A stretch of 64,000 nucleotides of DNA from Macrostomum lignano (taxonomy: Eukaryota), in the NCBI GenBank assembly GCA_002269645.1, contig NIVC01002257.1:62001-126000 (forward strand), written 5' to 3'. The position numbers and the translations under genes were made by a program. This document shows positions 1 to 51,987 of the stretch, piece by piece; position 1 is the first letter of the stretch; every line of letters begins with the position of its first letter. A model generated the notes under the pieces. It worked only from the letters and a program-made list of their open reading frames with translations, was not told where the DNA came from and made no database searches.

Positions 1-39
1 CAGGTCTGCAGCCAACTCCTACCCACCCAACCCTCGCAG

Positions 40-435
40 AAGCTGACCCGCAGGCAGAAAAGCTTCGAACTCATCGCCGGCCGTCTGAGCACCGAAGATT
101 TCGACAAATTCCGCGTCATTTTATCCCGGGATTACACATCGTCAGATGAGGAATTTGAAGATTGTTCCGCATCGGCAGCTGCCACTGCATCGGCTGGGGC
201 GCCGCTTCGCGTCCGCGAGTTGCCCTGGGAGTCGGCAGAGATGGCGGAGATGAAGCGGCAGCTGGACACGGCTTACCTGGATAGCTGCGCCACAGCTAAA
301 CAGTCCGAACAGTTGCGCCGGGTTGCCCGCGGCACCGGCTGCCTGAGCGTCCGGCCGCCGCCAGCCGACTGTCCAGATTGGGCGATTCGACGCGAAACCG
401 CTGATCCGGGCGACTTAGGCAACGCCGATTGTTAA
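40..435 (+). CDS. Terminal exon of paralog A, C14orf93-like family protein (KLTRRQKSFELIAGRLSTEDFDKFRVILSRDYTSSDEE...LRVRELPWESAEMAEMKRQLD...SVRPPPADCPDWAI...)
   Basis: Acceptor ccctcgcag|AAG at 38-39 and an open frame to TAA 433-435. Colinear and highly similar to exons 10294-10467 + 11305-11508 of the downstream gene. The motif order (SSDEE, V-x-x-LPW-x-S, LD, S-x-RPPP, P-x-WA) recalls C14orf93-like proteins, from memory rather than a search. Confidence 0.85.
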   Translation, partial: KLTRRQKSFELIAGRLSTEDFDKFRVILSRDYTSSDEEFEDCSASAAATASAGAPLRVRELPWESAEMAEMKRQLDTAYLDSCATAKQSEQLRRVARGTGCLSVRPPPADCPDWAIRRETADPGDLGNADC

Positions 436-2713: not shown

Positions 2714-5265
2714 ATGCCACAGATGGCAGCCTGCGAGTCGGCTGCGCCGCCATTCTCGCCTCTGACTCTATTCGAGTCGACAATTACCAACGCCCAGATG
2801 CTACTGGAGTCCATGGCCGAACGAGAACTGTTCACCGCTATGCGCATTGTCGCCTGTCTGCATTCCCAGATGCTGCAAGTGATGGAGCCACGGTTTGGCC
2901 GACTGTGCGATCGAAGCGATCAGCTGGGCCTGCTGATTGACTCTGACCCATCCGCTGCTGGCCGGAGCTCTGGGCAGCAGCAGCAACAGCAGCAACCGGG
3001 TCAGACCTCTAATCAGCAGCAACAGCAGCTGCAGGGCAGTCAGCAGCATCGAACCAAGGCTGATCCAGATGCCGGCGACGGAGTTCTTGGCGCTGCCCTG
3101 TGCGCCATCAAGGTAACTTGATTAATCAGTAGAATTACCACGGGAAATGAAATAAAAAACTGAAGCTTTTTATCGCGACTAGGCAGACATTAGAAACTGC
3201 ACACTCAGTCATGCTTTAAAGCCATTAGGCGGACATTAGAAACTGCACACTCAGTCATGCTTTAGAGCCATTAGGCGGACATTAGAAACTGCACACTCAG
3301 TCATGCTTTAGAGCCATTAGGCGGACATTAGAAACTGCACACTCAGTCATGCTTTAGAGCCATTAGGCAGATATTAGAAACTGCACACTCAGTCATGCTT
3401 TAAAGCCATTAGGCAGATATTAGAAACTGCACACTCAGTCATGCTTTAGAGCCATTAGGCGGACATTAGAAACTGCACACTCAGTCATGCTTTAGAGCCA
3501 TTAGGCGGACATTAGAAACTGCACACTCAGTCATGCTTTAGAGCCATTAGGCGTACATTAGAAACTGCGCACTCAGTCATGCTTTAAAGCCATTAGGCGG
3601 CTGTATGAAAAATCTCCCCCTTTCCAGGCGGACCCGGATGATTCAACCCGCCGATCCCTGCGCCCCCTGGCCGACTCCACCGCCGCAGTCGCCGCTGGCG
3701 CCACCCCCGAGGACGCCGACGATGAAGAGGAATTAGAAGAAGAACTCGAAGAGGAAGACGAAGAGTGCGTCATCATGGCTGCCACAGCTGCCGAGGAGGC
3801 CGAGTTTGCAGCGTCGACTGCCTACGGCGGCTATCATCATTCCCAGCATCCCCAGCTTCATCATCCGCAGCAGCAGCAGCCCGTTCCCAAGATTGCCCGC
3901 TACGATTTCTCATTAGGCGCCTCCTCGTCGGCCTCCTCCCTAGCCGCCATTGGTGGCGACGTGCCAGCCGAGTGTAAAACTGTGATGCGCCGGGCCTACA
4001 AAGCTTTGAAAGGCGCCGGGCCGCATCTGTTCGATTTTAGTCAGCCGTGAGTGTCCGTCCGGTTTGAAATTTAATGCCATAATACCCAACTGTCTTCAGG
4101 GTTTTTGTATTTCTTCGAAACCGCAAGTCTCGTGTGTTTCCTGAAAACCGCAAGTCTCGTGTGTTTCCTGGAAACCGCTAGTCCCCTGTTTCCTGGAAAC
4201 CGCTAGTCTCCTGTTTCCTGGAAACCGCTAGCCTCCTGTTTCCTGGAAACCGCTAGTCTCCTGTTTCCTGGAAACCGCTAGTCTCCTGTTTCCTGGAAAC
4301 CGCTAGTCTCCTGTTTCCTGGAAACCGCTAGCCTCCTGGGTTTCCTGGAAACCGCTAGCCTCCTGGGTTTCCTGGAAACCGCTAGTCTCGTGTTTTTCTC
4401 AGTCTCATATTTTCTTGGAAACCTTTAGTCTCATGTGGTTCTTGGAAACCCCTGGTGTCATGTTTCTCAGAAACGGCTTGTCTCATGTTTATTGGAACTG
4501 TCTCATGTTTATTGGAACTGTCTCATGTTTATTGGAACTGGCTCGTTTGTTTCCTGGAAACCGCTAGTCATGTGTTTCCTGGAAACCAGTAGTCTCGTGC
4601 GTTTTCCAGTTTCATATATTTTGAAAATCTCTATAAGTTTAAAATTCTTCAATGAACCATTAAAAAGGTAGAAAGTCCCGAGTATACTCCTTAATTAATA
4701 TATTCATGCACATTATCGAACCCTTGCCGCCGCAGTTTCGGAGCCGATGTCAATCAGCGAGTTGCCGCCCAGGTGATGACCAAAGCCAAGGAGTTGGCCA
4801 TAGGCAAGGGCTGGCCAGATGACATCTGGCAAAGTGAGTGTCGCTAATATTTGTTATTCAATTTGCTTTATACTATTAGTAGCATATCCATTGTGTTTTA
4901 ACAATTGTCCTGGAAACGTCGCAAGTTCTCACCTTTTTATAGTCACTTGTGTCTCATTCTTTCACCAATTGTCCCACTTGGTCATATCTGCACTTTTCAT
5001 GCCTACCTGTAACGCTCTTGTGCGTTGTTGTTCGTTAAAAGGTTTTCAAATTATTCGTTCTCTCAAAACAACGCGATATGCTGTCAATTTTGCAGCGCAT
5101 TTGTCATTTACAGTGGCATTGACTTGTATGATCATTAATTATCTAATTAACTGATAACTATATGAATCTCTGCTATGGCTAACTTTCATATAAATTTTAA
5201 TTGATAAGCCCGTTTTTATTAGATCTTCAACATGGGTGTAGATAGATAGATATATAGATAGATAT

Positions 5266-5335
<70 letters not shown>

Positions 5336-5336
5336 G

Positions 5337-5395
<59 letters not shown>

Positions 5396-5396
5396 G

Positions 5397-5480
<84 letters not shown>

Positions 5481-5499
5481 GATAGACAGATAGATAGAC

Positions 5500-5530
<31 letters not shown>

Positions 5531-5531
5531 C

Positions 5532-5590
<59 letters not shown>

Positions 5591-8500
5591 CAGATAGATA
5601 AATAGATAGATAGATAGATAGATAGATAGACAGATAGATAGATAGAATAGATAGATAGATTCATAGAAAGCTAGATAGACAGACAGACAGATACATGGTC
5701 ATGGTATTGTCACAGATAATTGCCGTATAAATGCAGTAAACTCAACGTCGCACACCAGAGCGAGCCACGAGCGAATCCAGTGTACTTAGCTGGCCCAGTG
5801 CAAATGCTTTAAAAGTTAAATGCCGGCCTCTTCCAACTGCCCTTGCATTGTCCCTTTCTCTTTGCTATCTTTAACTGTTAAAACAGGCTTGCCAAAGAGG
5901 AGCAGACTAGACATGATCTTCCTCACCTTTAAGCACAATAATAAGCAGCGAAGTAAATTGTTCGTAAGTCCGCTCGATCTGCTTTTGTCTGCTGCGCGGG
6001 TAAAACTGCTTTTTTGACCAGCAACAATTTTTGCTCCAGAATCTTGATTTGCAATAGGCAATTTTGGTTTTGATCTTGTTTTCTTGTCGGCCTCGTGGGG
6101 CGACGATGTAAGTTTTTAATTGGTAGCTAATTGCTCAGGTAGTTTTATTTCGTAGGTAATTGCTCAGGTAGTTTTAATTGGTAGCTAATTGCTCAGGTAG
6201 TTTTAATTGGTAGCTAATTGCTCCGGTAGTTTTATTTGGTAGATAATTGCTCCAGTAGTTTTAATTGGTAGCTAATTGCTCAGGTAGTTTTAATTGGTAG
6301 ATAATTGCTCAGGTAGTTTTAATTGGTAGCTAATTGCTCCGGTAGTTTTATTTGGTAGATAATTGCTCCAGTAGTTTTAATTGGTAGCTAATTGCTCAGG
6401 TAGTTTTAATTGGTAGATAATTGCTCAGGTAGTTTTAATTGGTAGCTAATTGCTCCGGTAGTTTTAATTGGTAGCTAATTGCTCAGGTAGTTTTAATTGG
6501 TAGATAATTGCTCCGGTAGTTTTATTTGGTAGATAATTGCTCCAGTAGTTTTAATTGGTAGCTAATTGCTCAGGTAGTTTTAATTGGTAGATAATTGCTC
6601 AGGTAGTTTTAATTGGTAGCTAATTGCTCCGGTAGTTTTATTTGGTAGATAATTGCTCCAGTAGTTTTAATTGGTAGCTAATTGCTCAGGTAGTTTTAAT
6701 TGGTAGATAATTGCTCAGGTAGTTTTAATTGGTAGCTAATTGCTCCGGTAGTTTTAATTGGTAGATAATTGCTCAGGTAGTTTTATTGCCCTTGTTTTAA
6801 TTCGAGTCTAAGTTAGTTACTTATCTATAGAAGCTTGTGACGTTTCTTTAATTAATTTATAATTAATTAGATAGTTAGTAAGACCAATAAGGCAAAACGG
6901 AAGGTAAACTCGCCGTTAAACTTGCAGGCCTACCGCCTGTGTGCCGTTTGTCGACTGTATTCTCTAAATTGCGATTCGATATTCGACGGAATTATAAATT
7001 TAACGTAAGATTAATTAGGATTCAAAGCAGGGAAGATTTTCGTAATTTCCAGTCTTGAATAAACATTGTTTTAGTTCTTTATTATTTTATATTTTAATTG
7101 TTTCTCCAAGCATTAATTGCTTACAACTTGTGACGTTTCAAATCAGTTCCTGTCGAAAAAGTTCTGCATTTTAAAATGATTAACAATAATTTTTTCTATG
7201 CAATGTTTTTTTCTAGGAATTGCCTACAAATATCGTATAGATGGCATTTTTAGTCATTTTCGGACCAAGGCCAAGTCTAAATATCGGGAAATCGTAAGCC
7301 AAAATAATGCGCCTCTGCTACTACTCACAACTACGATATGTACTGTGTGTTGCGTGTACTTTTGTGTTACATTGTAAACGGCGTTTATTTGATGCTCGCC
7401 GTGTCTAAATCATAGGGTTGATATTAAGCTGTGGCCAAGTATTGGGATGAGATTAAGCCATGTTTGAAATCATAGGGGTGAGATTAAGCTGTGACCAAGT
7501 ATTGGGATGTGATTAAGCCATGTTTGAAATCATAGGGTGAGATTAAGGCATGTTTAAAATCATAAGGGGTGAGATTAAGCCATGTTTGAAATCATAGGGT
7601 GAGATTAAGCTGTGGCCAAGTATTGGGATGAGATTAAGCCATGTTTAAAATCATAGGGTGAGATTAAGCTGTGACCAAGTATTGGGATGTGATTAAGCCA
7701 TATTTGAAATCTTAGGGGTGAGATTAAGCTGTGACCAAGTATTGGGATGTGATTAAGCCATATTTGAAATCATAGGGTGAGATTAAGCTGTGACCAAGTA
7801 TTGGGACGTGATTAAGCCATATTTGAAATCATAGGGGTGAGATTAAGCTGTGACCAAGTATTGGGATGTGATTAAGCCATATTTGAAATCATAGGGGTGA
7901 GATTAAGCCATGTTTAAAATCATAGGGTGAGATTAAGCTTTGTTCAATCACACGGATAGGATCAGGCCTTGTCTTAATCCTTAGGGTTAGATTAAGCTGT
8001 GCCCAAATAGAGTGAGATTAAGCCATGCTTGAATAATTGGGATGAGATTAAGCTTTATTATTTATTTTTTTTCTGAAAAGTCTCCGACCGTGAAGGTGGG
8101 ATTGCTGGACGAGCTGGCTGGCAGAGCCAACTGCAATTTGCGACGTTTTCAAGAGCCAGTCCGAAATCCAAGAATTCCCTAATTAATCTCCTATTCAACG
8201 TATTTTCAGAGATGCCCTACACATCAAAAATAGTTTACTTATTTTCAAATTTTCGCGCTAAAATGCGCATCAAACTGAGGAACTCTGTAAGCTAATCATG
8301 TCATGCAAGTTGTTTTTTTATTTCTAGAAAAATCTCCAATCTCCTACTGACAGTAGAGTCATAAAGACACGGAGAACTCGCGCTCGTTTTTTGAGACAGT
8401 GAAATATGTACTATTATTTAATTAATAGTAATATATGTACTGTTGCTTTGCAATCAATTTAATACAAAATCTCGTAGGACTTCCTTGCGACAGTCGGATA

Positions 8501-11500
8501 AAATATTTGCACGCAAATTTTGGCGTGAAAATTCGCGCTAGACACAAGCAGAAAGTGAGTATACTTATTAGAGCGATATGGAGAGTTCAATGGTCCGAGG
8601 GAGACTGAGTGTGAGCGGGAGGGAGACTGAGTGTGAGCGGGAGGGAGACTGAGTGTGAGCGGGAGGGAGACTGAGTGTGAGCGGGAGGGAGACTGAGTGT
8701 GAGCGGGGGGGAGACTGAGTGTGAGCGGGAGGGAGACTGAGTGTGAGCGGGGGGGAGACTGAGTGTGAGCGGGAGGGAGACTGAGTGTGAGCGGGAGGGA
8801 GACTGAGTGTGAGCGGGAGGGAGACTGAGTGTGAGCGGGAGGGAGACTGAGTGTGAGCGTGAGGGAGACTGAGTGTGAGCGGGGGGAGACTGAGGGCGGG
8901 AGGGAGACTGAGGGCGGGAGGGAGACTGAGGGCGGGAGGGAGACTGAGTGTGAGCGGGAGGGAGACTGAGTGTGAGCGGGAGGGAGACTGAGTGTGAGCG
9001 GGAGGGAGACTGAGTGTGAGCGGGAGGGAGACTGAGTGTGAGCGGGAGGGAGACTGAGTGTGAGCGGGAGGGAGACTGAGTGTGAGCGGGAGGGAGACTG
9101 AGTGTGAGCGGGAGGGAGTCTGAGTGTGAGCGGGAGGGAGACTGAGTGTGAGCGGGAGGGAGACTGAGTGTGAGCGGGAGGGAGACTGAGTGTGAGCGGG
9201 AGGGAGACTGAGTGTGAGCGGGAGGGAGTCTGAGTGTGAGCGGGAGGGAGACTGAGTGTGAGCGGGAGGGAGACTGAGTGTGAGCGGGAGGGAGTCTGAG
9301 TGTGAGCGGGAGGGAGTCTGAGTGTGAGCGGGAGGGAGACTGAGTGTGAGCGGGAGGGAGACTGAGTGTGAGCGGGAGGGAGACTGAGTGTGAGCGGGAG
9401 GGAGACTGAGTGTGAGGGAGACTGAGTGTGAGCGGGAGGGAGACTGAGTGTGAGCGGGAGGGAGACTGAGTGTGAGCGGGAGGGAGACTGAGTGTGAGCG
9501 GGAGGGAGACTGAGTGTGAGCGGGAGGGAGACTGGGGTGAGAGGGAGGGAGACTGAGTGTGAGCGGGAGGGAGACTGAGTGTGAGCGGGAGGGAGACTGA
9601 GTGTGAGCGGGAGGGAGACTGAGTGTGAGCGGGAGGGAGACTGGGGTGAGAGGGAGGGAGACTGAGTGTGAGCGGGAGGGAGACTGAGTGTGAGCGGGAG
9701 GGAGACTGAGTGTGAGCGGGAGGGAGACTGAGTGTGAGCGGGAGGGAGACTGAGTGTGAGCGGGAGGGAGACTGAGTGTGAGCGGGAGGGAGACTGGGGT
9801 GAGAGGGAGGGAGACTGAGTGTGAGCGGGAGGGAGACTGAGTGTGAGCGGGAGGGAGACTGAGTGTGAGCGGGAGGGAGACTGAGTGTGAGCGGGAGGGA
9901 GACTGGGGTGAGAGGGAGACTGAGTGTGAGCGGGAGGGAGACTGGGGTGAGAGGGAGACTGAGTGTGAGCGGGAGGGAGACTGAGTGTGAGCGGGAGGGA
10001 GACTGAGTGTGAGCGGGAGGGAGACTGAGGGCGAGAGGGAGACTTGAGGACGAAAGGAAGAGGGGTATTGAAATGCATATTAAAGGTGAGGATAATAATA
10101 GTCAAGAGGAGGACAGAGAAATGAGGGAGAGATGGTAAGTGAAATGGGTTTTATTAATAAAGAGTCCCACAAGACAAACCGTTGAGTCGGTCAGAAGCGG
10201 CCGTACAGTCTTATCCAAGCTGATGGTGGTCCTAACCTGCTCATTGCCAAACTAACCGAAGAATCGCTATTCGCTTCCTCACAACTGCCACAGAAGCTCA
10301 GCCGTCGCCAGCGCAGCTTCGAACTGGTTGCCACCAGCCTCAGCACTGACGAATTGGAGAAATTCCGGGTTATTCTCACCCGGGATTACACCAGCTCGGA
10401 TGAGGAGTGCGGCTCCGGCGGCTCCGACCAGCTGCGGGTGCGCGAGCTGCCTTGGGAGTCTGATGAGGTAAACTATGCGCTATTTAGGTCTTTGTGTCTG
10501 CTCTGTAGGTCTTTGTGTCTGCTCTGTAGGTCTTTGTGCCTGCTCTGTAGGTCTCTGAGCCTGCTCTGTAGGTCCTTGTGCCTGCTCTATAGGTCTTTGT
10601 GCCTGCTCTGTAGGGTCTTTGTGCCTGCTCTGTAGGTCTTTGTGCCTGCTCTGTAGGTCTGAGCCTGCTATGTTGGTCTTTGTGCCTGCTCTGTAGGTCT
10701 TTGAGCCTGCTCTGTAGGTCCTTGTGCCTGCTCTATAGGTCTTTGTGCCTGCTCTGTAGGGTCTTTGTGCCTGCTCTGTAGGTCTTTGTGCCTGCTCTGT
10801 AGGTCTGAGCCTGCTATGTTGGTCTTTGTGCCTGCTCTGTAGGTCTTTGAGCCTACTCTGTAGGTCTTTGTGGCTGCTCTGTAGGTCTTTGAGCCTGCTC
10901 TATAGGTCTTTGTGGCTGCTCTGTAGGGTCTTTGTGCCTGCTCTATAGGTCTTTGTTGCTGCTCTGTTGGTCTTTTTGTCTGCTATGTAGGTCTTTGTGC
11001 CTGCTCTGTAGGTCTTTGAGCCTGCTATGTAGGTCTTTGTGCCTGCTCTGTAGGTCTTTGAGCCTGCTATGTAGGTCTTTGTGCCTGCTCTGTAGGTCCT
11101 TCTCTGTGTCTGCTATTAGGTCTTTGTCTGTGTCTGCTCTAGAGGTCTTTGTGCGTCTGCTCTGTAGGTCCCTGTCTGTTGGTCTATTCTCTAGCTTTTC
11201 CCTCCGTTCGTCAGTATCTGTATGTTAGTCAGTGTTTTTCTATTGATATTTACATGTCCATATTTTGTCTGACCACATCCTAATCATAATCCTAATCCCG
11301 GCAGGTAAAGCGGCTGAAGCGCCAGCTGGACCAGGTGTACGCCGACAACTGCGCCACTACCAAGCAGCGCCAGCAGCTGGCCAAGAGTATCAGAGACCCG
11401 ATGCGGGCCAGGTCGCAGCGCCCGCCGCCTGAGGGCGCGCCAGACTGGGCATTGAAACCCGCGCCGTCCTCGCCAACTGGCGCCTCGGCATCGGGAGCGC

Positions 11501-11508
11501 GTCGTTAA
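2714..11508 (+). CDS. Paralog B, C14orf93-like putative DNA-binding protein; exons 2714-3112, 3628-4046, 4736-4833, [one of five 77-nt exons], 10294-10467, 11305-11508 (~456 aa)
   Basis: All listed introns are GT..AG with consistent phases (0, 2, 1, 0, 0). N-terminal poly-Q and poly-E tracts, followed by FDFSQPFGADVNQRV...KGWPDDIWQ and the conserved C-terminal block shared with exon 40-435. AATAAA at 11515-11520. An extra short exon between the cassette and 10294 cannot be excluded. Confidence 0.8.
3180..3600. repeat. 46-bp minisatellite, about 9 copies, filling intron 1 of paralog B
   Basis: Unit taggcggacattagaaactgcacactcagtcatgctttagagccat. Confidence 0.95.
4120..4600. repeat. ~25-bp minisatellite (tttcctggaaaccgctagtctcctg) in intron 2 of paralog B
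   Basis: gaaacc recurs at 4171 and 4196; core units contain TTCCTGGAA. Confidence 0.9.
4913..4927 (+). promoter_or_regulatory. Candidate splicing docking site GAAACGTCGCAAGTT, about 80 nt downstream of the constitutive exon-3 donor
   Basis: Its reverse complement AACTTGCGACGTTTC recurs, with only G:U-compatible changes, at 6832-6846, 7125-7139 and 8135-8151, each upstream of an alternative exon. Confidence 0.75.
5240..5690. repeat. (GATA)n microsatellite
   Basis: More than 100 GATA/GACA units. Confidence 0.97.
5887..5963 (+). CDS. Alternative exon 4A, 77 nt: (S)LPKRSRLDMIFLTFKHNNKQRSKLF
   Basis: aaacag|GC...TTC|gtaagt; phase 1 to 0; no stop. Confidence 0.85.
6115..6790. repeat. 29-bp minisatellite (aattgctcaggtagttttaattggtagct), about 23 copies
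   Basis: Direct reading. Confidence 0.95.
6832..6846 (+). promoter_or_regulatory. Candidate selector for exon 4B (AGCTTGTGACGTTTC)
   Basis: 15-bp pairing with 4913-4927 including 2 G:U; ends about 80 nt before exon 4B. Confidence 0.7.
6928..7004 (+). CDS. Alternative exon 4B, 77 nt: (S)LPPVCRLSTVFSKLRFDIRRNYKFN
   Basis: cttgcag|GC...AAC|gtaaga; phase 1 to 0; no stop. Confidence 0.85.
7125..7139 (+). promoter_or_regulatory. Candidate selector for exon 4C (AACTTGTGACGTTTC)
   Basis: 15-bp pairing with 4913-4927 with 1 G:U; ends about 78 nt before exon 4C. Confidence 0.72.
7217..7293 (+). CDS. Alternative exon 4C, 77 nt: (R)IAYKYRIDGIFSHFRTKAKSKYREI
   Basis: tttttttctag|GA...ATC|gtaagc; phase 1 to 0; no stop. 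Confidence 0.85.
7405..8052. repeat. Compound ~30-bp minisatellite (gagattaagcc/gctgtg...aaatcataggg)
   Basis: About 20 recurrences of gagattaag/gtgattaag. Confidence 0.9.
8135..8151 (+). promoter_or_regulatory. Candidate selector for exon 4D (AATTTGCGACGTTTTCA)
   Basis: 17-bp pairing with 4911-4927 with 2 G:U; ends about 60 nt before exon 4D. Confidence 0.72.
8210..8286 (+). CDS. Alternative exon 4D, 77 nt: (K)MPYTSKIVYLFSNFRAKMRIKLRNS
   Basis: tattttcag|AG...TCT|gtaagc; phase 1 to 0; no stop. Confidence 0.85.
8478..8554 (+). CDS. Alternative exon 4E, 77 nt: (R)LPCDSRIKYLHANFGVKIRARHKQK
   Basis: atctcgtag|GA...AAA|gtgagt; phase 1 to 0; no stop. Confidence 0.85.
8598..10035. repeat. 22-bp minisatellite (gagactgagtgtgagcgggagg), about 65 copies
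   Basis: Direct reading; source of spurious ORF 8459-10105. Confidence 0.97.
10485..11170. repeat. 21-bp minisatellite (ctctgtaggtctttgtgcctg) filling the last intron of paralog B
   Basis: Direct reading. Confidence 0.93.
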
Positions 11509-12891: not shown

Positions 12892-19203
<6,312 letters not shown>

Positions 19204-32145: not shown

Positions 32146-35100
32146 TAGGGGTGTTCGGGGTTCGGGGTCGGGTCGGGTTTCGGGTCGGGTTTTGGTACCG
32201 GGTTCGGGGTTCGGGGTAGGTGTTCCGGGTCGGGTTCGGGGTTCGGGGTAGGGGTACCGGGTTCGGGGTTCGGGTCGGGTTTGGCCACCGGGTTTTCGGG
32301 GTTTTCGGGGTTTTGAACAATTATCATTCTCAAGAGTATTTTCAAGCACTTTTTACTCCTTATGCAAAATCCACAATGCGAAAGATATGCATTGAGTTTC
32401 AGGTACAACTTAAGTTATATTTTACATACAATTTGAAACGGAAATAGCAGATAGAACCATGGATTCATTTACACTTTCTGGTAAATAACGATTGTCGTTT
32501 TTCGACCCATTCAGTCTTGCAGTTGATGATTTAAAAAATTACGTTCAGTAATAATTTTACATGTGCTACGTGTAACATGGTCTGAACTTCTGGATTGGAT
32601 GAGGTCGAGGAAGCTTAAAATTTATAAATACACTATTATTCTCCACGCATAAGTCGCCAATAATCAATTATCACAATGATTACCTACTCATATCAGCATA
32701 CAATTTTATGTAAAGACGTCACTTTAGTTTTTGCATAGCAATTCTGTTATACCACTACTGACTTACTGTTAACTATAATCAAAAGTAAAAATAAATATAT
32801 ATTTGTGATTAACTCTCCTGTTTCATTGTATCATTGTTTTATCTGTGCTATCTCTTTATCGCTCTAGTTCTATCTCTACTGATATCTACACTACAGGGTA
32901 TAATCTAATTTTATTGTACTCTATTTTTGCAGCTTAAATAGGCCTAAACTCATAGATGTAATATTACTATGAAAGCAATTTCGTTGTAAGTATAGGTACG
33001 AAATGGTCCTGATTTTAGCTGTGAACTTTCATGTATCTTACTATTAGATCTTGGGTCTTGGTATTCCTTCCATCTCAATCCCAATCCCATTCCCATTGCA
33101 AGAAGTGTTTCATATTTCTTTTCCTAGTTGTAGAGTAGCTAAGGGAAATTAAACCACAAGGCTAAGTTGTTGAAGCTGTTAAGGCACATCTCAATATATA
33201 AAACTGAACCTCCTCTGTGGCTGCATGTGTTTCTATCTACAAGCAAAGTTTCTATTGGCCTATAATCTGTTTCTTATTGGTAGTTAGTTATATATACATA
33301 TAAAATTATAGAAATGAGAAGCAAGTAATAAGTATGAAGGCATGAAGCATTTAATTTGATAGCATAAATAAGCAGTGAACTTTTGTTGTTTACTAGCAAC
33401 TAGGTAATAATTAATGAATAGAAGGGTTCATAATGGTATTATATATATGGATCAGTTTACAAGTGTATATGCCTATATATTATTGTCAGTGTCACTTGGT
33501 AATTATAATGGGCAATGTATAGTACTAAACCAGTTGACATTTCCACACAAGTGTCAAGCCATGTTATTTTATTTTGAATGCAAATAACTTTTAAGGTATT
33601 TTTTATGACTGGAATAAAACCACTCTTGTGTTTTAGAAAATATTCTAATGATTCCAATTCATAAATATTTATTTTGCTTTCTATTGAAATGAGGACATGA
33701 AGAGCAAAAAGACTGCACTGATTTAAATTTTGAATAAAGTAACAACCTTTATGTAATTTTATTGCTAAACATTTACTATAACAGATGCAAAAAGATAATT
33801 ACTTCTCCATTGAAGTGACACTAGTATTTTTCATGATATTATGTAAGCAGTCTTTCTCAATCCCATATACTTCAAACGTTATTTACATTAATGTTGAAAA
33901 ATGTGGTTAGACCCCTTACGCAGAAATACCCAGTTAGCAATTGATTTCAATCACTGTACCATTACCTACCTAACCAATTCTCATTCCAGCTATTCAACCA
34001 GGTGGCACTGAAGCATGAAGTCCAGAGTTTGGAAGTATTTTGAACAGTCTGCAGATAAAAAAAATGCTATGTGTAAGGAGTGCAATGCGCACCTCAAACT
34101 TCAAAAGGATGGATCTACAAAAGCATTGCTAAATCACCTACGAAACCAACATAAGCTTCTCTGTTCCGAATCTGAGAGCAGGTCAAGTACATCCGCACCT
34201 GCACAGGTGCCTACTGCCAATGATCCTGAAGGAAGCAGTACTGTGCGAGAACAATCTACTGTGCCAGTGCCACTAAAGCAAATGAGAATCACAGGTAGTT
34301 TTGCGCCTGTAGCAGTGAGTCCTACTTCCCAGGCCTCATCTTCTAAGGTTAAGCCATCACTTTCAAGTGCGTTAGTGTCCAGGCTCGATGAGGCTGCCAT
34401 TAAAGCCATAATTCAAGATGGCCGTTCATTTGGTGACTTCCGCAAGAAAGGAATGCAAGGGTTCTTGCAAGCAATTCTGCCAGGCTATATGGGACCCAGA
34501 CGTCAGAAAGTTACTGACCGAGTTGACTCGCTGTTTGAGGAGAAAGTGGCTATGCTGAAAGTTCGTCTGGAGGCACCAACTGTCGTCAACTTTACAACTG
34601 ACTTATGGACAGACAGAACGAACATGGCCTACATGATAATAACGTGTCACTTTGCCAATGAAAGCTTCCAAGTTGAAAGCACTACACTCGATTTCATTCA
34701 CTTCACCGAGCGCCACACAGCCGAAGCTATAGCACATGCGTTTGTCCAGTGCCTTCAGAAGTATGGGCTCTACGATAAGTTCGGAAAGTGCACCACGGAC
34801 CAGGGTAGTAACATTGTTCGTGCTGGAAAAATCTGCGATCGCATGCAACGACTGAGCTGCCTTGGGCATATTCTGCATCTGGTGGTGTGCCACGGCTCCG
34901 GGCTCTGGGAAGCAACTGACTCAAGCGCTGATGGTGTGAATGGCGACAGCAGCACAGAATGCAATGAAAGTGAAGACGAAGACGATTGCACTGAGTGGGC
35001 AGAAGAATTCAGAACACTTCCACTTTCATCGGAGGGCACCAAAAAGATTGCCAGCGCCATAACAAAAATCCGCAGGACAGCAAAGTTATTCAGGCGGTCC

Positions 35101-37154
35101 ACCAGGGCTGCAGATGCATTTCGTCGGGACGCAGAAGCAGATACCTTGCTACCGCTGGATGTGAAGACCCGGTGGAGTTCGACTTACAGCATGCTTCGCG
35201 TCTATCTACAGCGCTACCCTGATGTGGACAGAACACTTTGCCAGCTCATCCAGGACGCGACCAGCGATGCCGAAATCAAGCAACTGCGAAGCGTTTTTCT
35301 TCGCCAGGAGGAGAAAGAGGTCGCGGGTACACTTCTAGCCATTCTGAGACAATTCGCAGACGCCACAGAGATGCTATCTGGACAAAATTATCCAACGGCT
35401 AACATTGCCTACATTGTTCTTTACGGTTTGCGGCAGTTTCTCTCTGCGGAGGATGTCAATGACACTGATCGATTCCTGCGAAGGCGGCTACTGGAGCAGT
35501 TAAATAAGTATACATTTGAGTCCACAACATTCAACATTCTATTCTACAAGACCGCCGCATTCTTGGACAACACAATTATTGCTTCTCCCCACCTTAACTT
35601 GGGCGACATGCTAGACGTGCAAAATCACCTTAAGAATGAGGTTGCCTGGAGCATCGAGCAGGAGACTGAGGGGAGTGCCATCCAAGAGGCTACCTCCAAT
35701 TCCGGTGCGGGCGCTTCTTCGACAGATGAGGACGATTGTAGCAGTACTGTCTCGGCTGTTAACGAGGGATCAAAGTTTTTGAAATTCTGCCAATCGTCTG
35801 GCATAACAACGCGCGAGAGCAACTTTAATGCAATCAGGTCCAGTGCTCGGGGAGACACCACGAAGAAAGAAGCCCGGCGCAAGGCAGCAGATCAGCTTTC
35901 GCTATACCGTAGCCTGGCGCAGCAGAGTTTTAGGCTAAGCACGAGCGACTTCTGGAGCCAAAATTCTGCCAACCTTCCAGAGCTGGCCGAGCTAGCCAAG
36001 CTCTACCTCTCAGCTCCGGCGACTTCAGTACCATCTGAGTGTGCCTTCAGCGCAGCCGGATTTCTGAAGCGCAAGGAACGCTGCAGCTTGTCGAGTGCGA
36101 GTCTTGAGAAACTCATGTTTTTGCGAGATAAGTTTGATTAACAATATGACTTAAAGACATGAGTGGCTTATCAATTTTGATCACGAGTTAGTAGTACTAG
36201 TACTATAACTACTTTGGGTCGTGTGGGATAGAGGGTGCAAAAGCTGAACTTGCTGAACTGTCATGGCTTAAAATACAGTGTATTTATTATACAGTAGAAA
36301 GTTAATTCTCAGTAGCACGTCTGGGAGGTAAGGGCCATAAATCAATGCTCACACGTCCATAAGTGTACATAAAATTTATGGCCAACTGTCTGAAGGAAAT
36401 TTGCCTGCTAATGCCCAAACTATTATCGATACTACCCAATTGGCGGCTGGCCTTTGATGTCGCGCACGCGTTTCAGTTTGCCTGGAGTAATTAATTTATC
36501 ATTCAATGTACATTTGCCAAAACATGGGTGTACGTAATTTTTTTGGATTGGACAGAGTGTACTCGTTGTTCTCTTTTACATCTTATGCTTTTACCATTAC
36601 TGAATTAGTAGCTGTAGCCGGTAGTCCGAACTTGAAAGTGATGTGTTACCGTGTAGAGGCAGTAGAGTGCACAATGCTTTTTCGTATGTTGCTACGCCTG
36701 ATGCGAACTTGCAACCTGAAAAATATAGCTTTTCATGCGCCATTTTCTGCACTTGCCTTTCACTTTCTATGTTTGTAGACTTGTAATATTACTATTATTA
36801 TTCATTTACTTTGTCTATGACCCCAGTATGTAGAGTACTATCTAGCATCTACTGAAAATATATGACAAAGGACCGAACGTCGCGCCCAAAAGGCTTACAA
36901 TTGAAGTGAAGTACAATACAAATGAATACTGTACCTTTATCGGTGGAAAAAGTTTATTAATTTATTAAAATGATTGACCAAAATAAGCGTGAAAATGTTC
37001 GGGGTTACGTTCGGGGTCGGGTCGGGTTTTGGTACCGGGTTCGGGGTTCGGGGTTGGAAGAAATGTTCGGGACGGGGTTCGGGGTTCGGGGTAGGGGTAC
37101 CGGGTTCGGGGTAAACCCCGAACCCCGAAAAAATGGCCGACCCGAACACCCCTA
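32146..37154 (+). mobile_element. Full-length hAT DNA transposon (5009 bp)
   Basis: 14-bp TIRs TAGGGGTGTTCGGG (32146-32159 / 37141-37154); perfect 8-bp TSD GTAGTCAT (32138-32145 and 37155-37162); GGTTCGGG subterminal repeats at both ends; intact transposase. Confidence 0.97.
34015..36141 (+). CDS. hAT transposase, 708 aa (BED finger, DDE core, hATC dimerisation domain)
   Basis: WKYF..CKEC..HLRNQH; TTDLWTD; TTDQGSNIV; CLGHILHLVV; DVKTRWSSTYSML; PATSVPSECAFS; uninterrupted ORF. Confidence 0.97.
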   Translation: MKSRVWKYFEQSADKKNAMCKECNAHLKLQKDGSTKALLNHLRNQHKLLCSESESRSSTSAPAQVPTANDPEGSSTVREQSTVPVPLKQMRITGSFAPVAVSPTSQASSSKVKPSLSSALVSRLDEAAIKAIIQDGRSFGDFRKKGMQGFLQAILPGYMGPRRQKVTDRVDSLFEEKVAMLKVRLEAPTVVNFTTDLWTDRTNMAYMIITCHFANESFQVESTTLDFIHFTERHTAEAIAHAFVQCLQKYGLYDKFGKCTTDQGSNIVRAGKICDRMQRLSCLGHILHLVVCHGSGLWEATDSSADGVNGDSSTECNESEDEDDCTEWAEEFRTLPLSSEGTKKIASAITKIRRTAKLFRRSTRAADAFRRDAEADTLLPLDVKTRWSSTYSMLRVYLQRYPDVDRTLCQLIQDATSDAEIKQLRSVFLRQEEKEVAGTLLAILRQFADATEMLSGQNYPTANIAYIVLYGLRQFLSAEDVNDTDRFLRRRLLEQLNKYTFESTTFNILFYKTAAFLDNTIIASPHLNLGDMLDVQNHLKNEVAWSIEQETEGSAIQEATSNSGAGASSTDEDDCSSTVSAVNEGSKFLKFCQSSGITTRESNFNAIRSSARGDTTKKEARRKAADQLSLYRSLAQQSFRLSTSDFWSQNSANLPELAELAKLYLSAPATSVPSECAFSAAGFLKRKERCSLSSASLEKLMFLRDKFD

Positions 37155-44287: not shown

Positions 44288-45196
44288 TTGAAGTTACAAC
44301 TAAACTACCGAGAAATTATTCATCTTTAAAAATGAAACCAAGTTTACTTAAAAAAATAAATCACATCCACCAACCAAAGTTCCCGATATATTTTCATAAT
44401 AGACAGCGCGTCTGTTGTGTTGTAATGTAAACTGAACGATCTGCTCACAGTTCATTCAGTCTTTGGTTGTTCCGCACGCGGGCAGAGCTGGGTCATAAAA
44501 CTCAAATTTAGTTCGCATATATCAAATAGAGTAGACAGGCTCAATTGCAAACGAGCTCAATTATAGGCCGGCAATATGGCACTTCATAATATATCGTATT
44601 TACCGAACTCCAGTAGAGGCCTATATTGCTAAAGCTATCTCTTGGAAACGAACTGGCCTGGGGTTCATGACTGCACTGTTTACTCAAGGCATGCGCCACC
44701 CGGGGGGGGGTGGGGGTGGTGGGAAAGGGGAATCGGAACTCTAGCGGTTGTTGGAAAAATAGGGGAGCCCATTTCGCGAAAAAATATCCCAAGCTGCATT
44801 GAGCCGGGGCGGTGAGCAAGCGAGGACCTTGCTGTAGGGGGGAGGGGTTGCGCGGCCCCCTCTCTCCTGGTCCCTCCACTGAACCCCCGGCCTGTCTAAA
44901 AATATTTGTCACACTCTCCGAGCCTTCTGATTGGCTGGGCCGGCACACCGGCACGGGCCCCAACACCCCATCCAACGCAGGCCTATTTGGTAAAACCCCC
45001 CACCCAGGTGTCTGCCTGAAGCCCATCTATCTATATTTTACTGCCGGCATCGGTATACCTTCAGATTGATAGACAAGCGTTTTAAACACACACAGAGCTC
45101 CAGTCATAAGAAGACAGACAGACTGATTGGATCGACAGATAACTCAGTTTTTTGAGCACTTGACCAGCTGCAGCGGCGGCCACCGCAAGTACGATC

Positions 45197-46883
45197 ATGT
45201 CTGCAGCGATTCTGTGCTCAGCGAAGACCTACAGCGTCAACAGCCGCTCGCCCTGCGACAAGAAGCGAAGCCAAAGTTCGGCAGAGTGCACCTGCCGTCT
45301 GCAGCAGCCTCCGGTGTCGGCGGTGGCGGCCGCTCTGGCCGAGCAGGAGCTCCGGCTGCTTGGCATCCGGCTGCCAAATCAGCCATCGCTTCATCAGCAG
45401 AGGCCTCCTCCAGCTGCTGCCGCGTTGTCCGCTTCAGCGGCGAGTTCGTTGCTGACTTCGACGCCAACTGCAGCAGCGCCGACGACCACGGCCTGTTTTG
45501 GCCGGGCGTTGGCGGACCAGCCAAGCCGCGAGGTGCCCGGCTTCGGCCGGGTGCCCGCCCTGCTGGCCGACTGCTGCGCCTACCTGCGCTGTGGCGGCCT
45601 TCTGGACACCGAGGGCCTGTTCCGCGTTGAAGGCTCCCGACTGCGGCTGCGCGACCTTCGACAGCGTCTGGAACACGGCTGCGGTATCCGAGACGGCACG
45701 CCGCCGCAGGATGTCTGCTCAACTTTGAAGGCCTGGCTGCGCGAGCTGCCGGAGCCGCTGGTGCCGGCCAGGATGGCCCACGCCTTGGCCGAAGCTGCCG
45801 CTCAGGCGTCCCCGGAGCGCCGGGTTCGAATCCTGCGACTGTGCGGCCTGCTGCTGCCAGCTGACCAGCTGACCGCCCTGCAGTTCCTCTGTTGCTTTCT
45901 TGGCGAGGTGAGGCTCTTTTTCGAGTTTTTTATTAAACAAGAAATTGTCTGATTAGTTTTATTGATTCATCATTCTACTAAGTCGCCTGTTCAGTAGTAT
46001 CATACGCAAATTACACTAGAATTCTGGTTTAAAAAATCCATTTTTCAATGAAATTCAGGTGAGCCGCAACAGCCAGCGAAACCGCATGGACGCCTCAAAT
46101 TTGGCCACATCCCTAGGGCCCGGCCTCCTCCTCGCCCGGGCCCCATCAGCCACAGTCTGTCCGCGCGAGATGGCCCGCCTGAACAGCGGAGTCGCACTGC
46201 TGGTGGAGTTCCCCAACGAGCTGGGCCTGCACCAGCACCAGCACCTCCTGCAGCTGCAGCAGCAGGCGCGCCACATCTCCCGCCAGCACCACCAGCTCGA
46301 CAGCGGAGAAGATTCCAGCGACAGCATTCAACAGGAAGAGAATCGTCGGCGTCGTCGACGAAGCAGCGGCGCCCTCGGCGGCGCTTTGAAAGCCGTCGGC
46401 CGGGCGGTCAGTCGGCTGGCCAGCCGGTCGCGCAGCCGCAGTCCCGGTCGGAGCCGCCAGCTGCACCCGCAGCCGCCAACGCCGCAGAGACCTCCGCGAG
46501 CGTCGCCCAGCCCGCCGGCCGTCCGACGTCTGCTGCACCGCCTGAGCGCCGGCGGCTCCTCCGCGGCTTCCTCCGGCCCGACGGCTGTCCGACGCGGAGG
46601 CAGCGCCGTCGCCCCGGCTGTCGATCGCTTGCCGCCGCTGGCGCCGCCGAGGAAGCAACCGCAGCTGCCTCCTCCGCCGCCGCCGCTGCCTCCGCTGAGC
46701 ACCCTGCCGTCAGCCAGCGCCCTGCGGACTCCCCAGCTGCTGCAGCATCATCACCAGCATCATCTGCATCGGGCAGCCTCAGCGGACAGTCCGACTCATT
46801 GCTCGGCATCCAGCGGCCCTCTGAGGGCGGTGCACAGCATCCAGACAACTCCGCTACGAGTGCTGCAGTCCCCCCTGGCCTGA
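45197..46883 (+). CDS. ARHGAP11: RhoGAP, ARHGAP11-like, ~511 aa; exons 45197-45907 and 46059-46883
   Basis: FGRAL..VP.FGRVPALLADCC; TEGLFRVEGS (catalytic Arg); LKAWLRELPEPL; NRMDASNLATSLGPGLL. N-terminal ALAEQELRLLGIRL resembles ARHGAP11A. Intron gag|gtgagg...ttcag|gtg is phase 0. Confidence 0.88.
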
Positions 46884-50934: not shown

Positions 50935-51987
50935 TTAGGAGCGTCTGGAAGGACAGCAGAAGAAGCAACAGCGCCCCGATTCGAGCTCTCTATTACGCAT
51001 TTCCGCATGTTCCCGACGATGTCTTTCAAGAGCTAATTCCGCTTCCTTAACTCTTAGGTCAGCATTGTGCCGCATTTGCCTAATATCAGGTGGGTTGTTG
51101 CGTTGTTCGAAATCTTCTCGTCGCCACCTTTGTTCTTCGAAAGAATTCGGTTGGTTCAAGACAACTTGAGGATTGTTTTGAAAATTTTGTCGATGCTGCT
51201 TAACAGAATCTTTTTCCTCTTCAGTTTTTCTTGCTACAGCTTCAGTACCTTCCATCACTTTTTCGATCTGGTCTCCTAGACCGTCGAGGTCTCGCAAAGA
51301 GGTCTTCAAGTCGTTCTGTAGGTCTGCAAACTCATTGGCCAGCTTGTCCAGACTGCCTGCATGACTGCTCGTGTAGGCGCCAGTACCAGCGGCTGCGGTA
51401 CCCAGTGCCGCTGCTCCCACACCGCCCAGGACTCCTCCAGTGGCGACAGTTAAAATCAAGCCGGCCACTACTAAGAGTCCTGTTGCCGTGTAGCCGACAG
51501 CTCGAGCATTTCTAGCACTCGAACTCGCTTCCTCCGCCGCTATTCTGGATCGCTCGCTAAGATCTGTGTTTAGTCTCACCGCTTCTTTCATGTGCTCCTT
51601 AAAAAAATTGTATTCCTCGTAAATTTCCGCTGCTTTTTCTAGCATCTCTTGTAGCTGTCGAATGATCTCTTCGTATTGATTTGACTGTACTTGCCTCGCC
51701 ACAATAGGGTTCCTATCCCTGTTGAACTCGAACCGGTTCCACTTGCTCTGAAGTTCGTTGCAAAGTCGCTGGAATTTGTTGGCAGATGATTTTGTCGTTT
51801 TTAGAACGTCTTCATATTCGGCTGCTAGTGCACTTTCGATACTTGCGGCCTCTTTGCTAAGCTTCATCAGCACTTCTTGTGCCCTGCTAGTCACCTCTAC
51901 AACTGTATTAACCAGTAAATTGGCTGCTTCGACCATCTTTCCGGCTATTCCAGCAGATGTGACGAGGTTTTTGCCAAATTTCTCCAT
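50935..51987 (-). CDS. 350-aa APOL/ClyA-like helical protein 1 with a central hydrophobic hairpin and C-terminal CCFFCC
   Basis: Intronless CDS; hairpin TATGLLVVAGLILTVATGGVLGGVGAAALGTAAAGTG flanked by coiled coils; probable 5' UTR intron 52135-52297. Confidence 0.85.
   Translation of the reverse strand: MEKFGKNLVTSAGIAGKMVEAANLLVNTVVEVTSRAQEVLMKLSKEAASIESALAAEYEDVLKTTKSSANKFQRLCNELQSKWNRFEFNRDRNPIVARQVQSNQYEEIIRQLQEMLEKAAEIYEEYNFFKEHMKEAVRLNTDLSERSRIAAEEASSSARNARAVGYTATGLLVVAGLILTVATGGVLGGVGAAALGTAAAGTGAYTSSHAGSLDKLANEFADLQNDLKTSLRDLDGLGDQIEKVMEGTEAVARKTEEEKDSVKQHRQNFQNNPQVVLNQPNSFEEQRWRREDFEQRNNPPDIRQMRHNADLRVKEAELALERHRREHAEMRNRELESGRCCFFCCPSRRS

What the first reader, a model, noticed from the sequence alone, without database searches (positions are those of the whole stretch)
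4911..8151. Dscam-like docking-site/selector RNA pairing controlling the exon cassette
Seen: GAAACGTCGCAAGTT (4913-4927) lies about 80 nt after the upstream constitutive donor. It is complementary to AGCTTGTGACGTTTC (6832-6846), AACTTGTGACGTTTC (7125-7139) and AATTTGCGACGTTTTCA (8135-8151). These sit about 60-80 nt upstream of exons 4B, 4C and 4D, and every deviation is G:U-compatible (15-17 bp duplexes). Exon 4E has only a weak candidate (TTTGAGACAGT, ~8390-8400), and proximal exon 4A has none evident. Established: competing docking/selector pairing governs the Drosophila Dscam1 exon 6 cluster. Inference: an independently evolved version of that mechanism, spanning up to 3.2 kb and several minisatellites.
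Basis: partly seen in the sequence, partly recalled or inferred. Interest (0 to 1): 0.92.

Follow-up and report, generated by a model that had tools for sequence, protein, structure and literature searches.

The report
Flatworm docking/selector RNA pairing for exon choice
An uncharacterised gene of the flatworm Macrostomum lignano carries five interchangeable 77-base exons, and one intron sequence can base-pair with a matching sequence in front of four of them, the same exon-choosing layout known from the insect Dscam1 gene but here in a different phylum and gene family.

Summary
The window is Macrostomum lignano DNA. It holds a six-position gene whose exon 4 exists as five tandem 77-nt variants (4A-4E). 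Only one-variant transcripts keep the reading frame.

CTGGAAACGTCGCAAGTTCT (4910-4929) lies 79 nt after the exon-3 donor. It forms 15-18 bp duplexes (-21 to -25 kcal/mol) with sequences 56-84 nt upstream of 4B, 4C, 4D and also 4E. Exon 4A has only a degenerate partner.

The G:U-tolerant complement occurs three times in the window against 0.01 expected. The exact 17-mer occurs nine times in the 764-Mb genome, always after exon 3 of three paralogous genes, each in three near-identical copies. These paralogs have 5, 14 and 7 variant exons.

Docking site and selectors are almost the only long intronic words the paralogs share. Paralogs with a single cassette lack the docking site. Across 26 cassettes, 20 have a duplex of -16 kcal/mol or better (8.8% with shuffled docking sites).

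This matches the Dscam1 exon-6 architecture, arisen independently in a flatworm. Not shown: transcript-level exclusivity, compensatory covariation (the docking site is invariant), and any mutational effect.

The parts
2723..3112 (+). Exon 1 of gene B (ATG at 2723)
   Evidence: Open frame and GT donor read. It matches NCBI protein P0001 (BOX15_Mlig018137g1), which comes from a near-identical copy of the locus.
3628..4046 (+). Exon 2
   Evidence: AG acceptor, GTGAGT donor and frame read. Colinear with P0001.
4736..4833 (+). Constitutive exon 3 (ends ...GKGWPDDIWQ plus one base; donor GTGAGT at 4834)
   Evidence: Identical in P0001.
4909..4931 (+). Docking site CCTGGAAACGTCGCAAGTTCTCA. The 17-mer identical in three paralogs, CTGGAAACGTCGCAAGT, is 4910-4926.
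   Evidence: There are 9 exact genomic copies, all after exon 3 of paralogs B, P2 and P3. Flanking intron sequence is unalignable between paralogs.
5756..5781 (+). Degenerate selector-like sequence upstream of 4A (weak, -15.7 kcal/mol, ending 105 nt before the acceptor)
   Evidence: It is within the range of shuffled controls, so it is doubtful.
5887..5963 (+). Variable exon 4A (77 nt; SLPKRSRLDMIFLTFKHNNKQRSKLF)
   Evidence: Borders are AG and GTAAGT. The frame is open only in phase 1.
6830..6847 (+). Selector for 4B (core AGCTTGTGACGTTTC, 6832-6846)
   Evidence: Duplex energy -24.7 kcal/mol.
6928..7004 (+). Variable exon 4B (77 nt)
7123..7141 (+). Selector for 4C (core AACTTGTGACGTTTC, 7125-7139)
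   Evidence: Duplex energy -23.1 kcal/mol. CTTGTGACGTTTC is shared with the selector of the orthologous P2 cassette 6.
7217..7293 (+). Variable exon 4C (77 nt), the variant present in the database protein P0001
8131..8152 (+). Selector for 4D (core AATTTGCGACGTTTTCA, 8135-8151; 17 bp including 2 G:U)
   Evidence: Duplex energy -24.1 kcal/mol. GCGACGTTTTCA is shared with the selector of the orthologous P2 cassette 7.
8210..8286 (+). Variable exon 4D (77 nt)
8372..8397 (+). Selector for 4E (GAGAACTCGCGCTCGTTTTTTGAGAC; bulged duplex using both ends of the docking site)
   Evidence: Duplex energy -21.4 kcal/mol.
8478..8554 (+). Variable exon 4E (77 nt)
   Evidence: 70% identical to P2 cassette 8.
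10294..10467 (+). Constitutive exon 5 (KLSRRQRSFEL...)
   Evidence: The acceptor was set from P0001, which joins 4C directly to KLSRRQ.
11305..11508 (+). Exon 6 with TAA stop, followed by AATAAA

Best explanation
Gene B, an uncharacterised protein of Macrostomum lignano, has a cluster of five mutually exclusive 77-nt versions of exon 4.

In the pre-mRNA, one docking site lies 79 nt downstream of the exon-3 donor. It can pair with only one of several selector sequences at a time. The selectors lie about 60-100 nt upstream of the variable exons, and all of them use the docking core GGAAACG.

The duplex that forms loops out the intervening exons and minisatellites, up to 3.5 kb. It places the branch point and 3' splice site of the exon behind the chosen selector within about 150-200 nt of the exon-3 donor, so that exon is spliced to exon 3.

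Because 77 is not a multiple of 3, transcripts with no variant or with two variants are frameshifted and hit premature stops. This is a second safeguard.

The proximal exon 4A has no good selector and is probably the default or low-use choice.

Shown here: the anatomy, the complementarity, the conservation and the genomic uniqueness.

Inferred: that the duplexes form in vivo, that they decide exon choice, and that some factor keeps the exons downstream of the chosen one silent.
For: 1. Complementarity far above chance. Three perfect Watson-Crick/G:U 15-mers occur in the window against 0.01 expected. Duplexes are -21 to -25 kcal/mol for 4B-4E.

2. Gene model. Five 77-nt exons have AG and GT(A/G)AG borders. 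A 1461-nt open reading frame results only with exactly one of them. Database protein P0001 contains only 4C, and the paralog protein P0002 contains only one cassette.

3. Genomic uniqueness. The exact 17-mer CTGGAAACGTCGCAAGT occurs 9 times in 764 Mb. All copies are on the sense strand in the intron after exon 3 of three paralogs, each in three near-identical copies.

4. Conservation. The flanks of the docking site are unalignable between paralogs. An unbiased scan for shared 11-mers finds the docking site as the longest shared intronic word. Selectors are shared at -85 to -98 nt of orthologous cassettes. A few other shared words were also found, including an 18-nt AT-rich palindrome.

5. Selectors across the family. 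The paralogs have 5, 14 and 7 cassettes. Of these 26, 20 have a duplex of -16 kcal/mol or better in the -170..-40 window, against 8.8% for shuffled docking sites. Thirteen reach -19 or better, against 1.9%. Eighteen have an ungapped paired run of 9 or more, against 12%.

6. Position. Thirteen of the 15 strongest duplexes anywhere in the three clusters start 83-127 nt upstream of a cassette acceptor.

7. Negative control. Paralogs with a single cassette (P4 and the upstream paralog A) have no docking site.

8. Pairing register. 72% of cells pair in register, against 36-46% when the register is slid. In the central 10 nt, 17 transitions are G:U-compatible and 6 are incompatible.

9. Near-identical copies. 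There are 0 differences in 266 docking/selector bases, against 34 in 2324 in the neighbouring unique intron.
Against: - No RNA evidence was available. Only isoforms with 4C (gene B) and cassette 8 (paralog P2) appear in protein databases, so use of the other variants and strict exclusivity are unproven.
- The docking site is invariant, so there is no true compensatory covariation. The shuffle control is not exceeded.
- Six of 26 cassettes lack a convincing selector: B 4A and P2 cassettes 1, 5, 12, 13 and 14.
- The registers used for the G:U count were chosen by maximising pairing, which biases that count.
- Several selectors in P3 pair over only about 10 bp (-16 to -17 kcal/mol), close to the tail of the null distribution.
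- The local fold around the docking site shows nothing special (z = -0.5).
Confidence: 0.8

Rival explanations
1. The similar sequences are passive leftovers of tandem duplication. Each duplication copied the exon with a piece of upstream intron, and the complementarity to one upstream site is an inherited inverted repeat without present function.
For: Mutually exclusive exon clusters do arise by tandem duplication that can copy one arm of a stem (PMC6071210). Orthologous cassettes in B and P2 carry related selectors.
Against: The rest of each upstream intron has diverged beyond recognition, both between cassettes and between paralogs. The selector and the 17-20 nt docking site are retained, the latter better than the adjacent coding sequence (64-72% protein identity). 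Single-cassette paralogs lack the docking site. This origin story is compatible with present function and does not replace it.
Confidence: 0.06
2. The motif is a binding site for a protein (a splicing regulator or a DNA-binding factor) that marks exon 3 and each variable exon. RNA-RNA pairing is incidental.
For: The core ACGTTTCC / GGAAACGT is short and very conserved, and GTTT is invariant in 19 selectors. Protein factors are needed in Dscam1 as well (hrp36; PMC4691838).
Against: Orientation is strictly asymmetric: one sense copy after exon 3 and only antisense copies before the variable exons. Different selectors complement different, overlapping stretches of a 23-nt docking site, which fits a duplex but not one fixed protein motif. 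Deviations favour G:U-compatible transitions on the transcribed strand.
Confidence: 0.05
3. The duplexes form, but they only help splice long, minisatellite-filled introns by shortening the effective distance. Which exon is used is decided by other signals such as splice-site strength, repressors or cell type.
For: Introns here reach 1-1.7 kb and vary in length between the near-identical copies because of minisatellites. Distal cassettes in P2 and P3 have weak donors such as GTAATT and GTTGGT, which suggests further layers of control.
Against: In P2 most introns between cassettes are only 117-191 nt, yet those cassettes still carry selectors. All selectors compete for the same docking core, so at most one can be helped per transcript, and that is in effect a choice mechanism.
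Confidence: 0.08

Closest known systems
Drosophila/arthropod Dscam1 exon 6 cluster (docking site downstream of exon 5, selector upstream of each exon 6 variant; Graveley 2005, as described in PMC4691838 and PMC6071210)
   Same: Same topology. There is one docking site in the intron after the upstream constitutive exon and one selector upstream of each variable exon. All selectors compete for the same docking nucleotides. The docking site is the most conserved intronic element.
   Different: - Different phylum (Platyhelminthes).
- Unrelated, uncharacterised gene with no Ig or FN3 domains.
- 5, 14 and 7 variants rather than about 48.
- Exons of 77 nt, so frame/NMD adds a second safeguard.
- The same docking sequence is shared by three paralogous genes.
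- Proximal exons lack good selectors.
- No experimental support yet, and no known hrp36-like repressor.
Insect 14-3-3zeta, Mhc, MRP1, srp and the Dscam1 exon 4/9 clusters (docking site downstream of the cluster, or bidirectional pairing; PMC6071210, PMC4691838)
   Same: Competing intronic RNA pairings select one exon from a tandem array. The arrays arose by tandem exon duplication.
   Different: In those genes the docking site lies downstream of the cluster, or two sets of pairings act. Here the shared-11-mer scan found no conserved docking-like element after the last cassette.
Mammalian ATE1 exons 7a/7b (competing structures R1/R4 against R3; PMC7797038)
   Same: Shows that competing RNA structures for mutually exclusive exons exist outside arthropods.
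   Different: ATE1 has only two exons and additional ultra-long-range helices. The flatworm case is a multi-exon docking/selector array.

Membership tests
Docking-site/selector competing-RNA-structure control of mutually exclusive exons (Dscam1 exon-6 type) | Tandem cluster of homologous, equal-length alternative exons of which exactly one is needed | tested here: met
   Five 77-nt exons have AG/GT borders. The reading frame is open only with one of them; none or two gives premature stops. The paralogs have 14 and 7 cassettes.
Docking-site/selector competing-RNA-structure control of mutually exclusive exons (Dscam1 exon-6 type) | A single docking site in the intron next to the flanking constitutive exon | tested here: met
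   One copy at 4909-4931, 79 nt after the exon-3 donor. There is one copy per locus in paralogs P2 and P3, and 9 exact copies genome-wide.
Docking-site/selector competing-RNA-structure control of mutually exclusive exons (Dscam1 exon-6 type) | A selector complementary to the docking site next to each variable exon | tested here: inconclusive
   Met for 4B-4E and for 20 of 26 cassettes across three paralogs. Not met for 4A and for P2 cassettes 1, 5 and 12-14.
Docking-site/selector competing-RNA-structure control of mutually exclusive exons (Dscam1 exon-6 type) | Selectors overlap on the docking site, so only one duplex can form at a time | tested here: met
   All 19 aligned selectors pair with the docking core AAAC, and nearly all with GGAAACG.
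Docking-site/selector competing-RNA-structure control of mutually exclusive exons (Dscam1 exon-6 type) | Evolutionary conservation of the docking site and selectors against diverged introns | tested here: met
   Tested between paralogs, because no other species was available. The docking site is the longest shared intronic word, and selectors are shared at orthologous cassettes. A few other shared words, including an 18-nt AT-rich palindrome, were also found. The 17-mer is unique to these loci.
Docking-site/selector competing-RNA-structure control of mutually exclusive exons (Dscam1 exon-6 type) | Compensatory covariation between the docking site and selectors | tested here: inconclusive
   The docking site is invariant. 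Only 7 cells change on both sides, which is no more than in shuffles.
Docking-site/selector competing-RNA-structure control of mutually exclusive exons (Dscam1 exon-6 type) | Transcripts carry exactly one variant, and disrupting or restoring the pairing changes exon choice | not testable with these tools
   No RNA-seq data or mutants were available. The only hints are P0001 (4C alone) and P0002 (one cassette).
Dscam / Ig-superfamily gene | Ig and FN3 domains, orthology to Dscam | tested here: not met
   The protein and its paralogs have no Pfam domain. The family is an uncharacterised metazoan family. The resemblance is in mechanism only.
Downstream-docking or bidirectional type (14-3-3zeta, Mhc, srp) | Conserved docking element in the intron after the last variable exon | tested here: not met
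   The paralogs share no docking-like intronic word after the last cassette. The duplex scan finds nothing there except weak minisatellite matches.

The most novel reading that the evidence does not exclude
The identical docking site and interchangeable selectors occur in three paralogous genes, nine loci in all, of an animal that already trans-splices its mRNAs.

Pairing could therefore also occur between pre-mRNAs of different paralogs and drive trans-splicing of exon 3 of one gene to a variable exon of another. This has been reported for chelicerate sDscam (PMC9258826).

That would pool 26 or more variants into one combinatorial repertoire. Such a repertoire might serve stochastic cell-identity or recognition functions in a flatworm.
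Probability: 0.07. Interest if true: 0.85.

Novelty: new member of a known kind. Interest (0 to 1): 0.72.

Why it matters
Multi-exon docking/selector systems are documented almost entirely in arthropods. Outside them there are only two-exon cases such as mammalian ATE1.

A clean, family-wide example in a flatworm would show that this RNA-structure logic arises independently when exons duplicate in tandem, as Ivanov and Pervouchine proposed (PMC6071210).

It also offers a small test system. There are three paralogs with 5, 14 and 7 variants and one shared docking site.

It further flags that current gene models of this family are wrong at the cluster. Several models fuse two cassettes or read into the intron.

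Tried and rejected
- **Other species.** Two searches of the 5.8-billion-protein collection returned only M. lignano proteins. An exact look-up of a paralog protein found nothing. Cross-species covariation could therefore not be tested.

- **Formal covariation count.** It is uninformative because the docking site never varies.

- **Frequent-repeat idea.** Rejected. The degenerate 15-mer has 53 genomic hits against 18 for the control. The excess comes from the gene family itself and from one unrelated dispersed repeat with no flank similarity. A 1-mismatch hit of the 17-mer on contig C2412 is unrelated to the family.

- **Exon 5 acceptor.** My first acceptor (10195) was wrong. P0001 shows it is at 10294.

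- **Protein function.** There is no Pfam domain. A profile search finds 384 relatives, including a hemichordate and a mussel protein, all uncharacterised.

- **Local structure of the docking region.** Not different from shuffles.

- **Literature.** No paper in the searchable library links Macrostomum or flatworms with docking/selector splicing or with these gene identifiers.
Full report
**What the window is.** The best protein matches to the gene model are all Macrostomum lignano proteins (BOX15_Mlig018137g1 and others). The assembly has 764 Mb in 5269 contigs, and the window is C2257:62001-126000. The whole locus exists in two further copies, on C521 and C1693, that are 94-98% identical in the BLAST alignments. 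Their unique intron sequence differs by only about 1.5%. Every paralog of the family likewise appears three times. From my own knowledge, this fits the recent genome duplication described for this species.

**Gene model.** I built the model from splice sites and reading frames.

| Exon | Window coordinates | Note |
|---|---|---|
| 1 | 2723-3112 | ATG at 2723 |
| 2 | 3628-4046 | |
| 3 | 4736-4833 | donor GTGAGT at 4834 |
| 4A | 5887-5963 | 77 nt |
| 4B | 6928-7004 | 77 nt |
| 4C | 7217-7293 | 77 nt |
| 4D | 8210-8286 | 77 nt |
| 4E | 8478-8554 | 77 nt |
| 5 | 10294-10467 | acceptor corrected from P0001 |
| 6 | 11305-11508 | TAA stop, then AATAAA |

- The NCBI protein P0001, predicted from the C1693 copy, is colinear with this model. 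It contains exactly one cassette, 4C, joined directly to KLSRRQRSFEL. That corrected my first exon-5 acceptor.
- With exactly one cassette the frame is open. With none or two it shifts and hits stop codons.
- Each cassette encodes a 26-residue basic segment. Similarity between them is weak: 43% between 4C and 4D and between 4D and 4E, and 26% between 4A and 4B.

**Checking the observation.**
- The pattern that allows only Watson-Crick or G:U pairs against the docking site hits exactly those three + strand sites. The expectation for the whole 64-kb window is 0.01.
- RNAduplex gives -24.7, -23.1 and -24.1 kcal/mol for 4B, 4C and 4D.
- Exon 4E has a bulged selector at 8372-8397 (-21.4 kcal/mol). 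It pairs with both ends of the extended docking site CCTGGAAACGTCGCAAGTTCTCA.
- Exon 4A has only a degenerate match at 5756-5781 (-15.7 kcal/mol). It is not distinguishable from controls.

**Is the 15-mer a common repeat?** No.
- A degenerate form has 53 genomic hits against 18 for the reversed control.
- Clustering the flanks shows the hits fall into the gene family itself, one unrelated dispersed repeat, and a few small groups. None resembles the flanks of the window's sites.
- The longer exact word CTGGAAACGTCGCAAGT occurs exactly nine times in 764 Mb. My calculation gives about 0.1 expected by chance. The single 1-mismatch hit is unrelated to the family.

**Paralogs give the decisive evidence.** The nine exact copies are three paralogous genes in three copies each. 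They are B (this window), P2 (C127/C162/C1722) and P3 (C586/C584/C2737). In each, the word lies on the sense strand in the intron after the exon-3 homologue, at 79, 447 and about 233 nt from the donor.

| Paralog | Cassettes between exons 3 and 5 | Docking site |
|---|---|---|
| B (this window) | 5 × 77 nt | yes |
| P2 | 14 (13 of 77 nt, a proximal one of 71 nt) | yes |
| P3 | 7 × 77 nt | yes |
| P4 | 1 | no |
| A (upstream neighbour) | 1, of a different length | no |

- Exon 3 is only 72% (P2) and 64% (P3) identical to B in protein.
- The intron flanks of the docking site cannot be aligned between paralogs, yet the docking site is identical over 17-20 nt.
- An unbiased list of 11-mers shared by the intronic parts of the clusters is short. 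It contains the docking site, selector words at -85 to -98 nt of orthologous cassettes (B 4C with P2 cassette 6; B 4D with P2 cassette 7; P2 cassette 8 with P3 cassette 2), and a few AT-rich words.

**Selectors across all 26 cassettes.**
- The best duplex with the docking site in the -170..-40 window is -16 kcal/mol or better for 20 of 26 cassettes, and -19 or better for 13. With shuffled docking sites the same windows reach these values in 8.8% and 1.9% of trials.
- An ungapped Watson-Crick/G:U run of 9 or more is present for 18 of 26 cassettes, against 12% in controls.
- Thirteen of the 15 strongest duplexes (-19 or better) found anywhere in the three clusters start 83-127 nt upstream of a cassette acceptor. 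Those windows cover about 7% of the scanned sequence, so by my binomial calculation this has a chance probability of about 1e-13.
- All selectors pair with the docking core GGAAACG, so their pairings exclude one another. Some extend to the 5' side (CCAGA) and others to the 3' side (AACTTGCG).
- In the fixed register, 72% of cells pair, against 36-46% when the register is slid by 1-3 nt.
- In the central ten positions of 19 selectors, 17 transitions are G:U-compatible and 6 are not. This count is biased by how the registers were chosen.
- Among the three near-identical copies of B, there are no differences in 266 docking/selector bases, against 34 in 2324 in the adjacent unique intron. This is a weak but consistent signal.

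**What is not shown.**
- The docking site never varies, so there is no compensatory covariation. The shuffle control is not exceeded.
- Six cassettes lack a convincing selector: B 4A and P2 cassettes 1, 5, 12, 13 and 14. The proximal exon is among them in both B and P2, which suggests it is a default choice.
- There are no RNA data. Only 4C (B) and cassette 8 (P2) are seen in clean database proteins. Several UniProt models of the family join two cassettes with a frameshift or read into the intron. I take these as prediction errors, not evidence.
- The local fold around the docking site is unremarkable.

**Mechanism proposed.** The docking site can pair with one selector per transcript. The duplex loops out everything between them, up to 3.5 kb. 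In the window this includes a (TAGA)n array and 29-mer and 60-mer minisatellites, whose lengths differ between the near-identical copies without affecting the elements. The branch point and 3' splice site behind the selector then lie close to the exon-3 donor. Frameshift and nonsense-mediated decay would remove products with zero or two variants. How exons downstream of the chosen one are kept silent is unknown. In Dscam1 this needs hrp36 (PMC4691838).

**Comparison with known systems.** The topology is that of the Dscam1 exon 6 cluster: docking site after the upstream constitutive exon, and selectors before each variant (PMC4691838, PMC6071210). It differs from the downstream-docking clusters (14-3-3zeta, Mhc, MRP1), because nothing conserved lies after the last cassette. 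The gene is unrelated to Dscam. It has no Pfam domain. It belongs to an uncharacterised metazoan family with 384 profile hits, including a hemichordate and a mussel protein. Searches of the paper library found no docking/selector report for flatworms or Macrostomum.

**Verdict.** This is a new, independently evolved member of a known kind of system. It is notable for being outside arthropods, for being shared by three paralogs, and for the clarity of the comparative signal.

Noticed in passing
window 5133-5150; locus L042 (P3_C586) 1336-1353: An 18-nt AT-rich palindromic word, CATTAATTATCTAATTAA, is shared by the first cluster intron of paralogs B and P3. TTAATTAA-like words also lie between the selectors and exons 4B, 4D and 4E. 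It may be a second conserved intronic element, or chance in AT-rich sequence.
   Followed up: no
window 5745-5753: A sense-orientation 9-mer, AACGTCGCA, identical to the centre of the docking site, lies about 135 nt upstream of exon 4A, the exon that lacks a good selector. It could be a decayed second docking site, a competitor for selectors, or chance.
   Followed up: no
locus L039 (reverse complement; P2 cassette 12, oriented coordinates 5421-5446): A selector-like sequence (-21.1 kcal/mol against the docking site) lies inside cassette 12 of paralog P2, in the codons for GRMCEIF, rather than upstream of it. The distal cassettes of P2 (12-14) and P3 (3-7) also have weak donors such as GTAATT, GTTAGT and GTTGGT. 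This hints at a different control for the distal part of the clusters.
   Followed up: partly
window 1-435 and upstream (C2257 about 57,100-62,400): A tandem paralog (A; protein P0004, 472 aa) ends at window 1-435. It has a single, longer, unrelated segment in place of the 77-nt cassette and has no docking site.
   Followed up: partly
window 14197-19203 (+): The next gene downstream is a very divergent protein with an SH2 domain (Pfam SH2, 25 bits). By eye its surrounding sequence resembles the STAT SH2 region. No STAT Pfam domains were detected.
   Followed up: partly
window 50935-52020, 58519-59625, 62058-63131 (all - strand): Three single open reading frames of about 360 aa without introns. 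Each has coiled-coil segments and a glycine-rich hydrophobic hairpin. One scores above the Pfam cut-off for SctB2, a bacterial type III secretion translocon protein (29.8 bits), which suggests a pore-forming-like architecture.
   Followed up: partly
window 34012-36141 (+); 63387-63998 (-): An intact 709-aa hAT transposase ORF (BED zinc finger plus hAT dimerisation domain), and a mariner-type transposase fragment at the window's end.
   Followed up: partly
window 45164-46883 (+): A RhoGAP-domain gene (Pfam RhoGAP, 77 bits) lies downstream of the STAT-like gene.
   Followed up: no
whole window, e.g. 5239-5693, 6114-6785, 7407-7908, 8597-10041: Introns are packed with micro- and minisatellites: 82 tandem-repeat rows in 64 kb. 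Copy numbers differ between the three near-identical copies of the locus.
   Followed up: partly
database proteins P0003, P0007, P0009, P0012 (UniProt models of paralogs P2 and P3): Existing gene models of this family are wrong at the exon cluster. They contain two cassettes, frameshifts or intron read-through, and they carry misleading names such as 'Exocyst complex component Sec8' and 'Protein kinase domain-containing'.
   Followed up: partly
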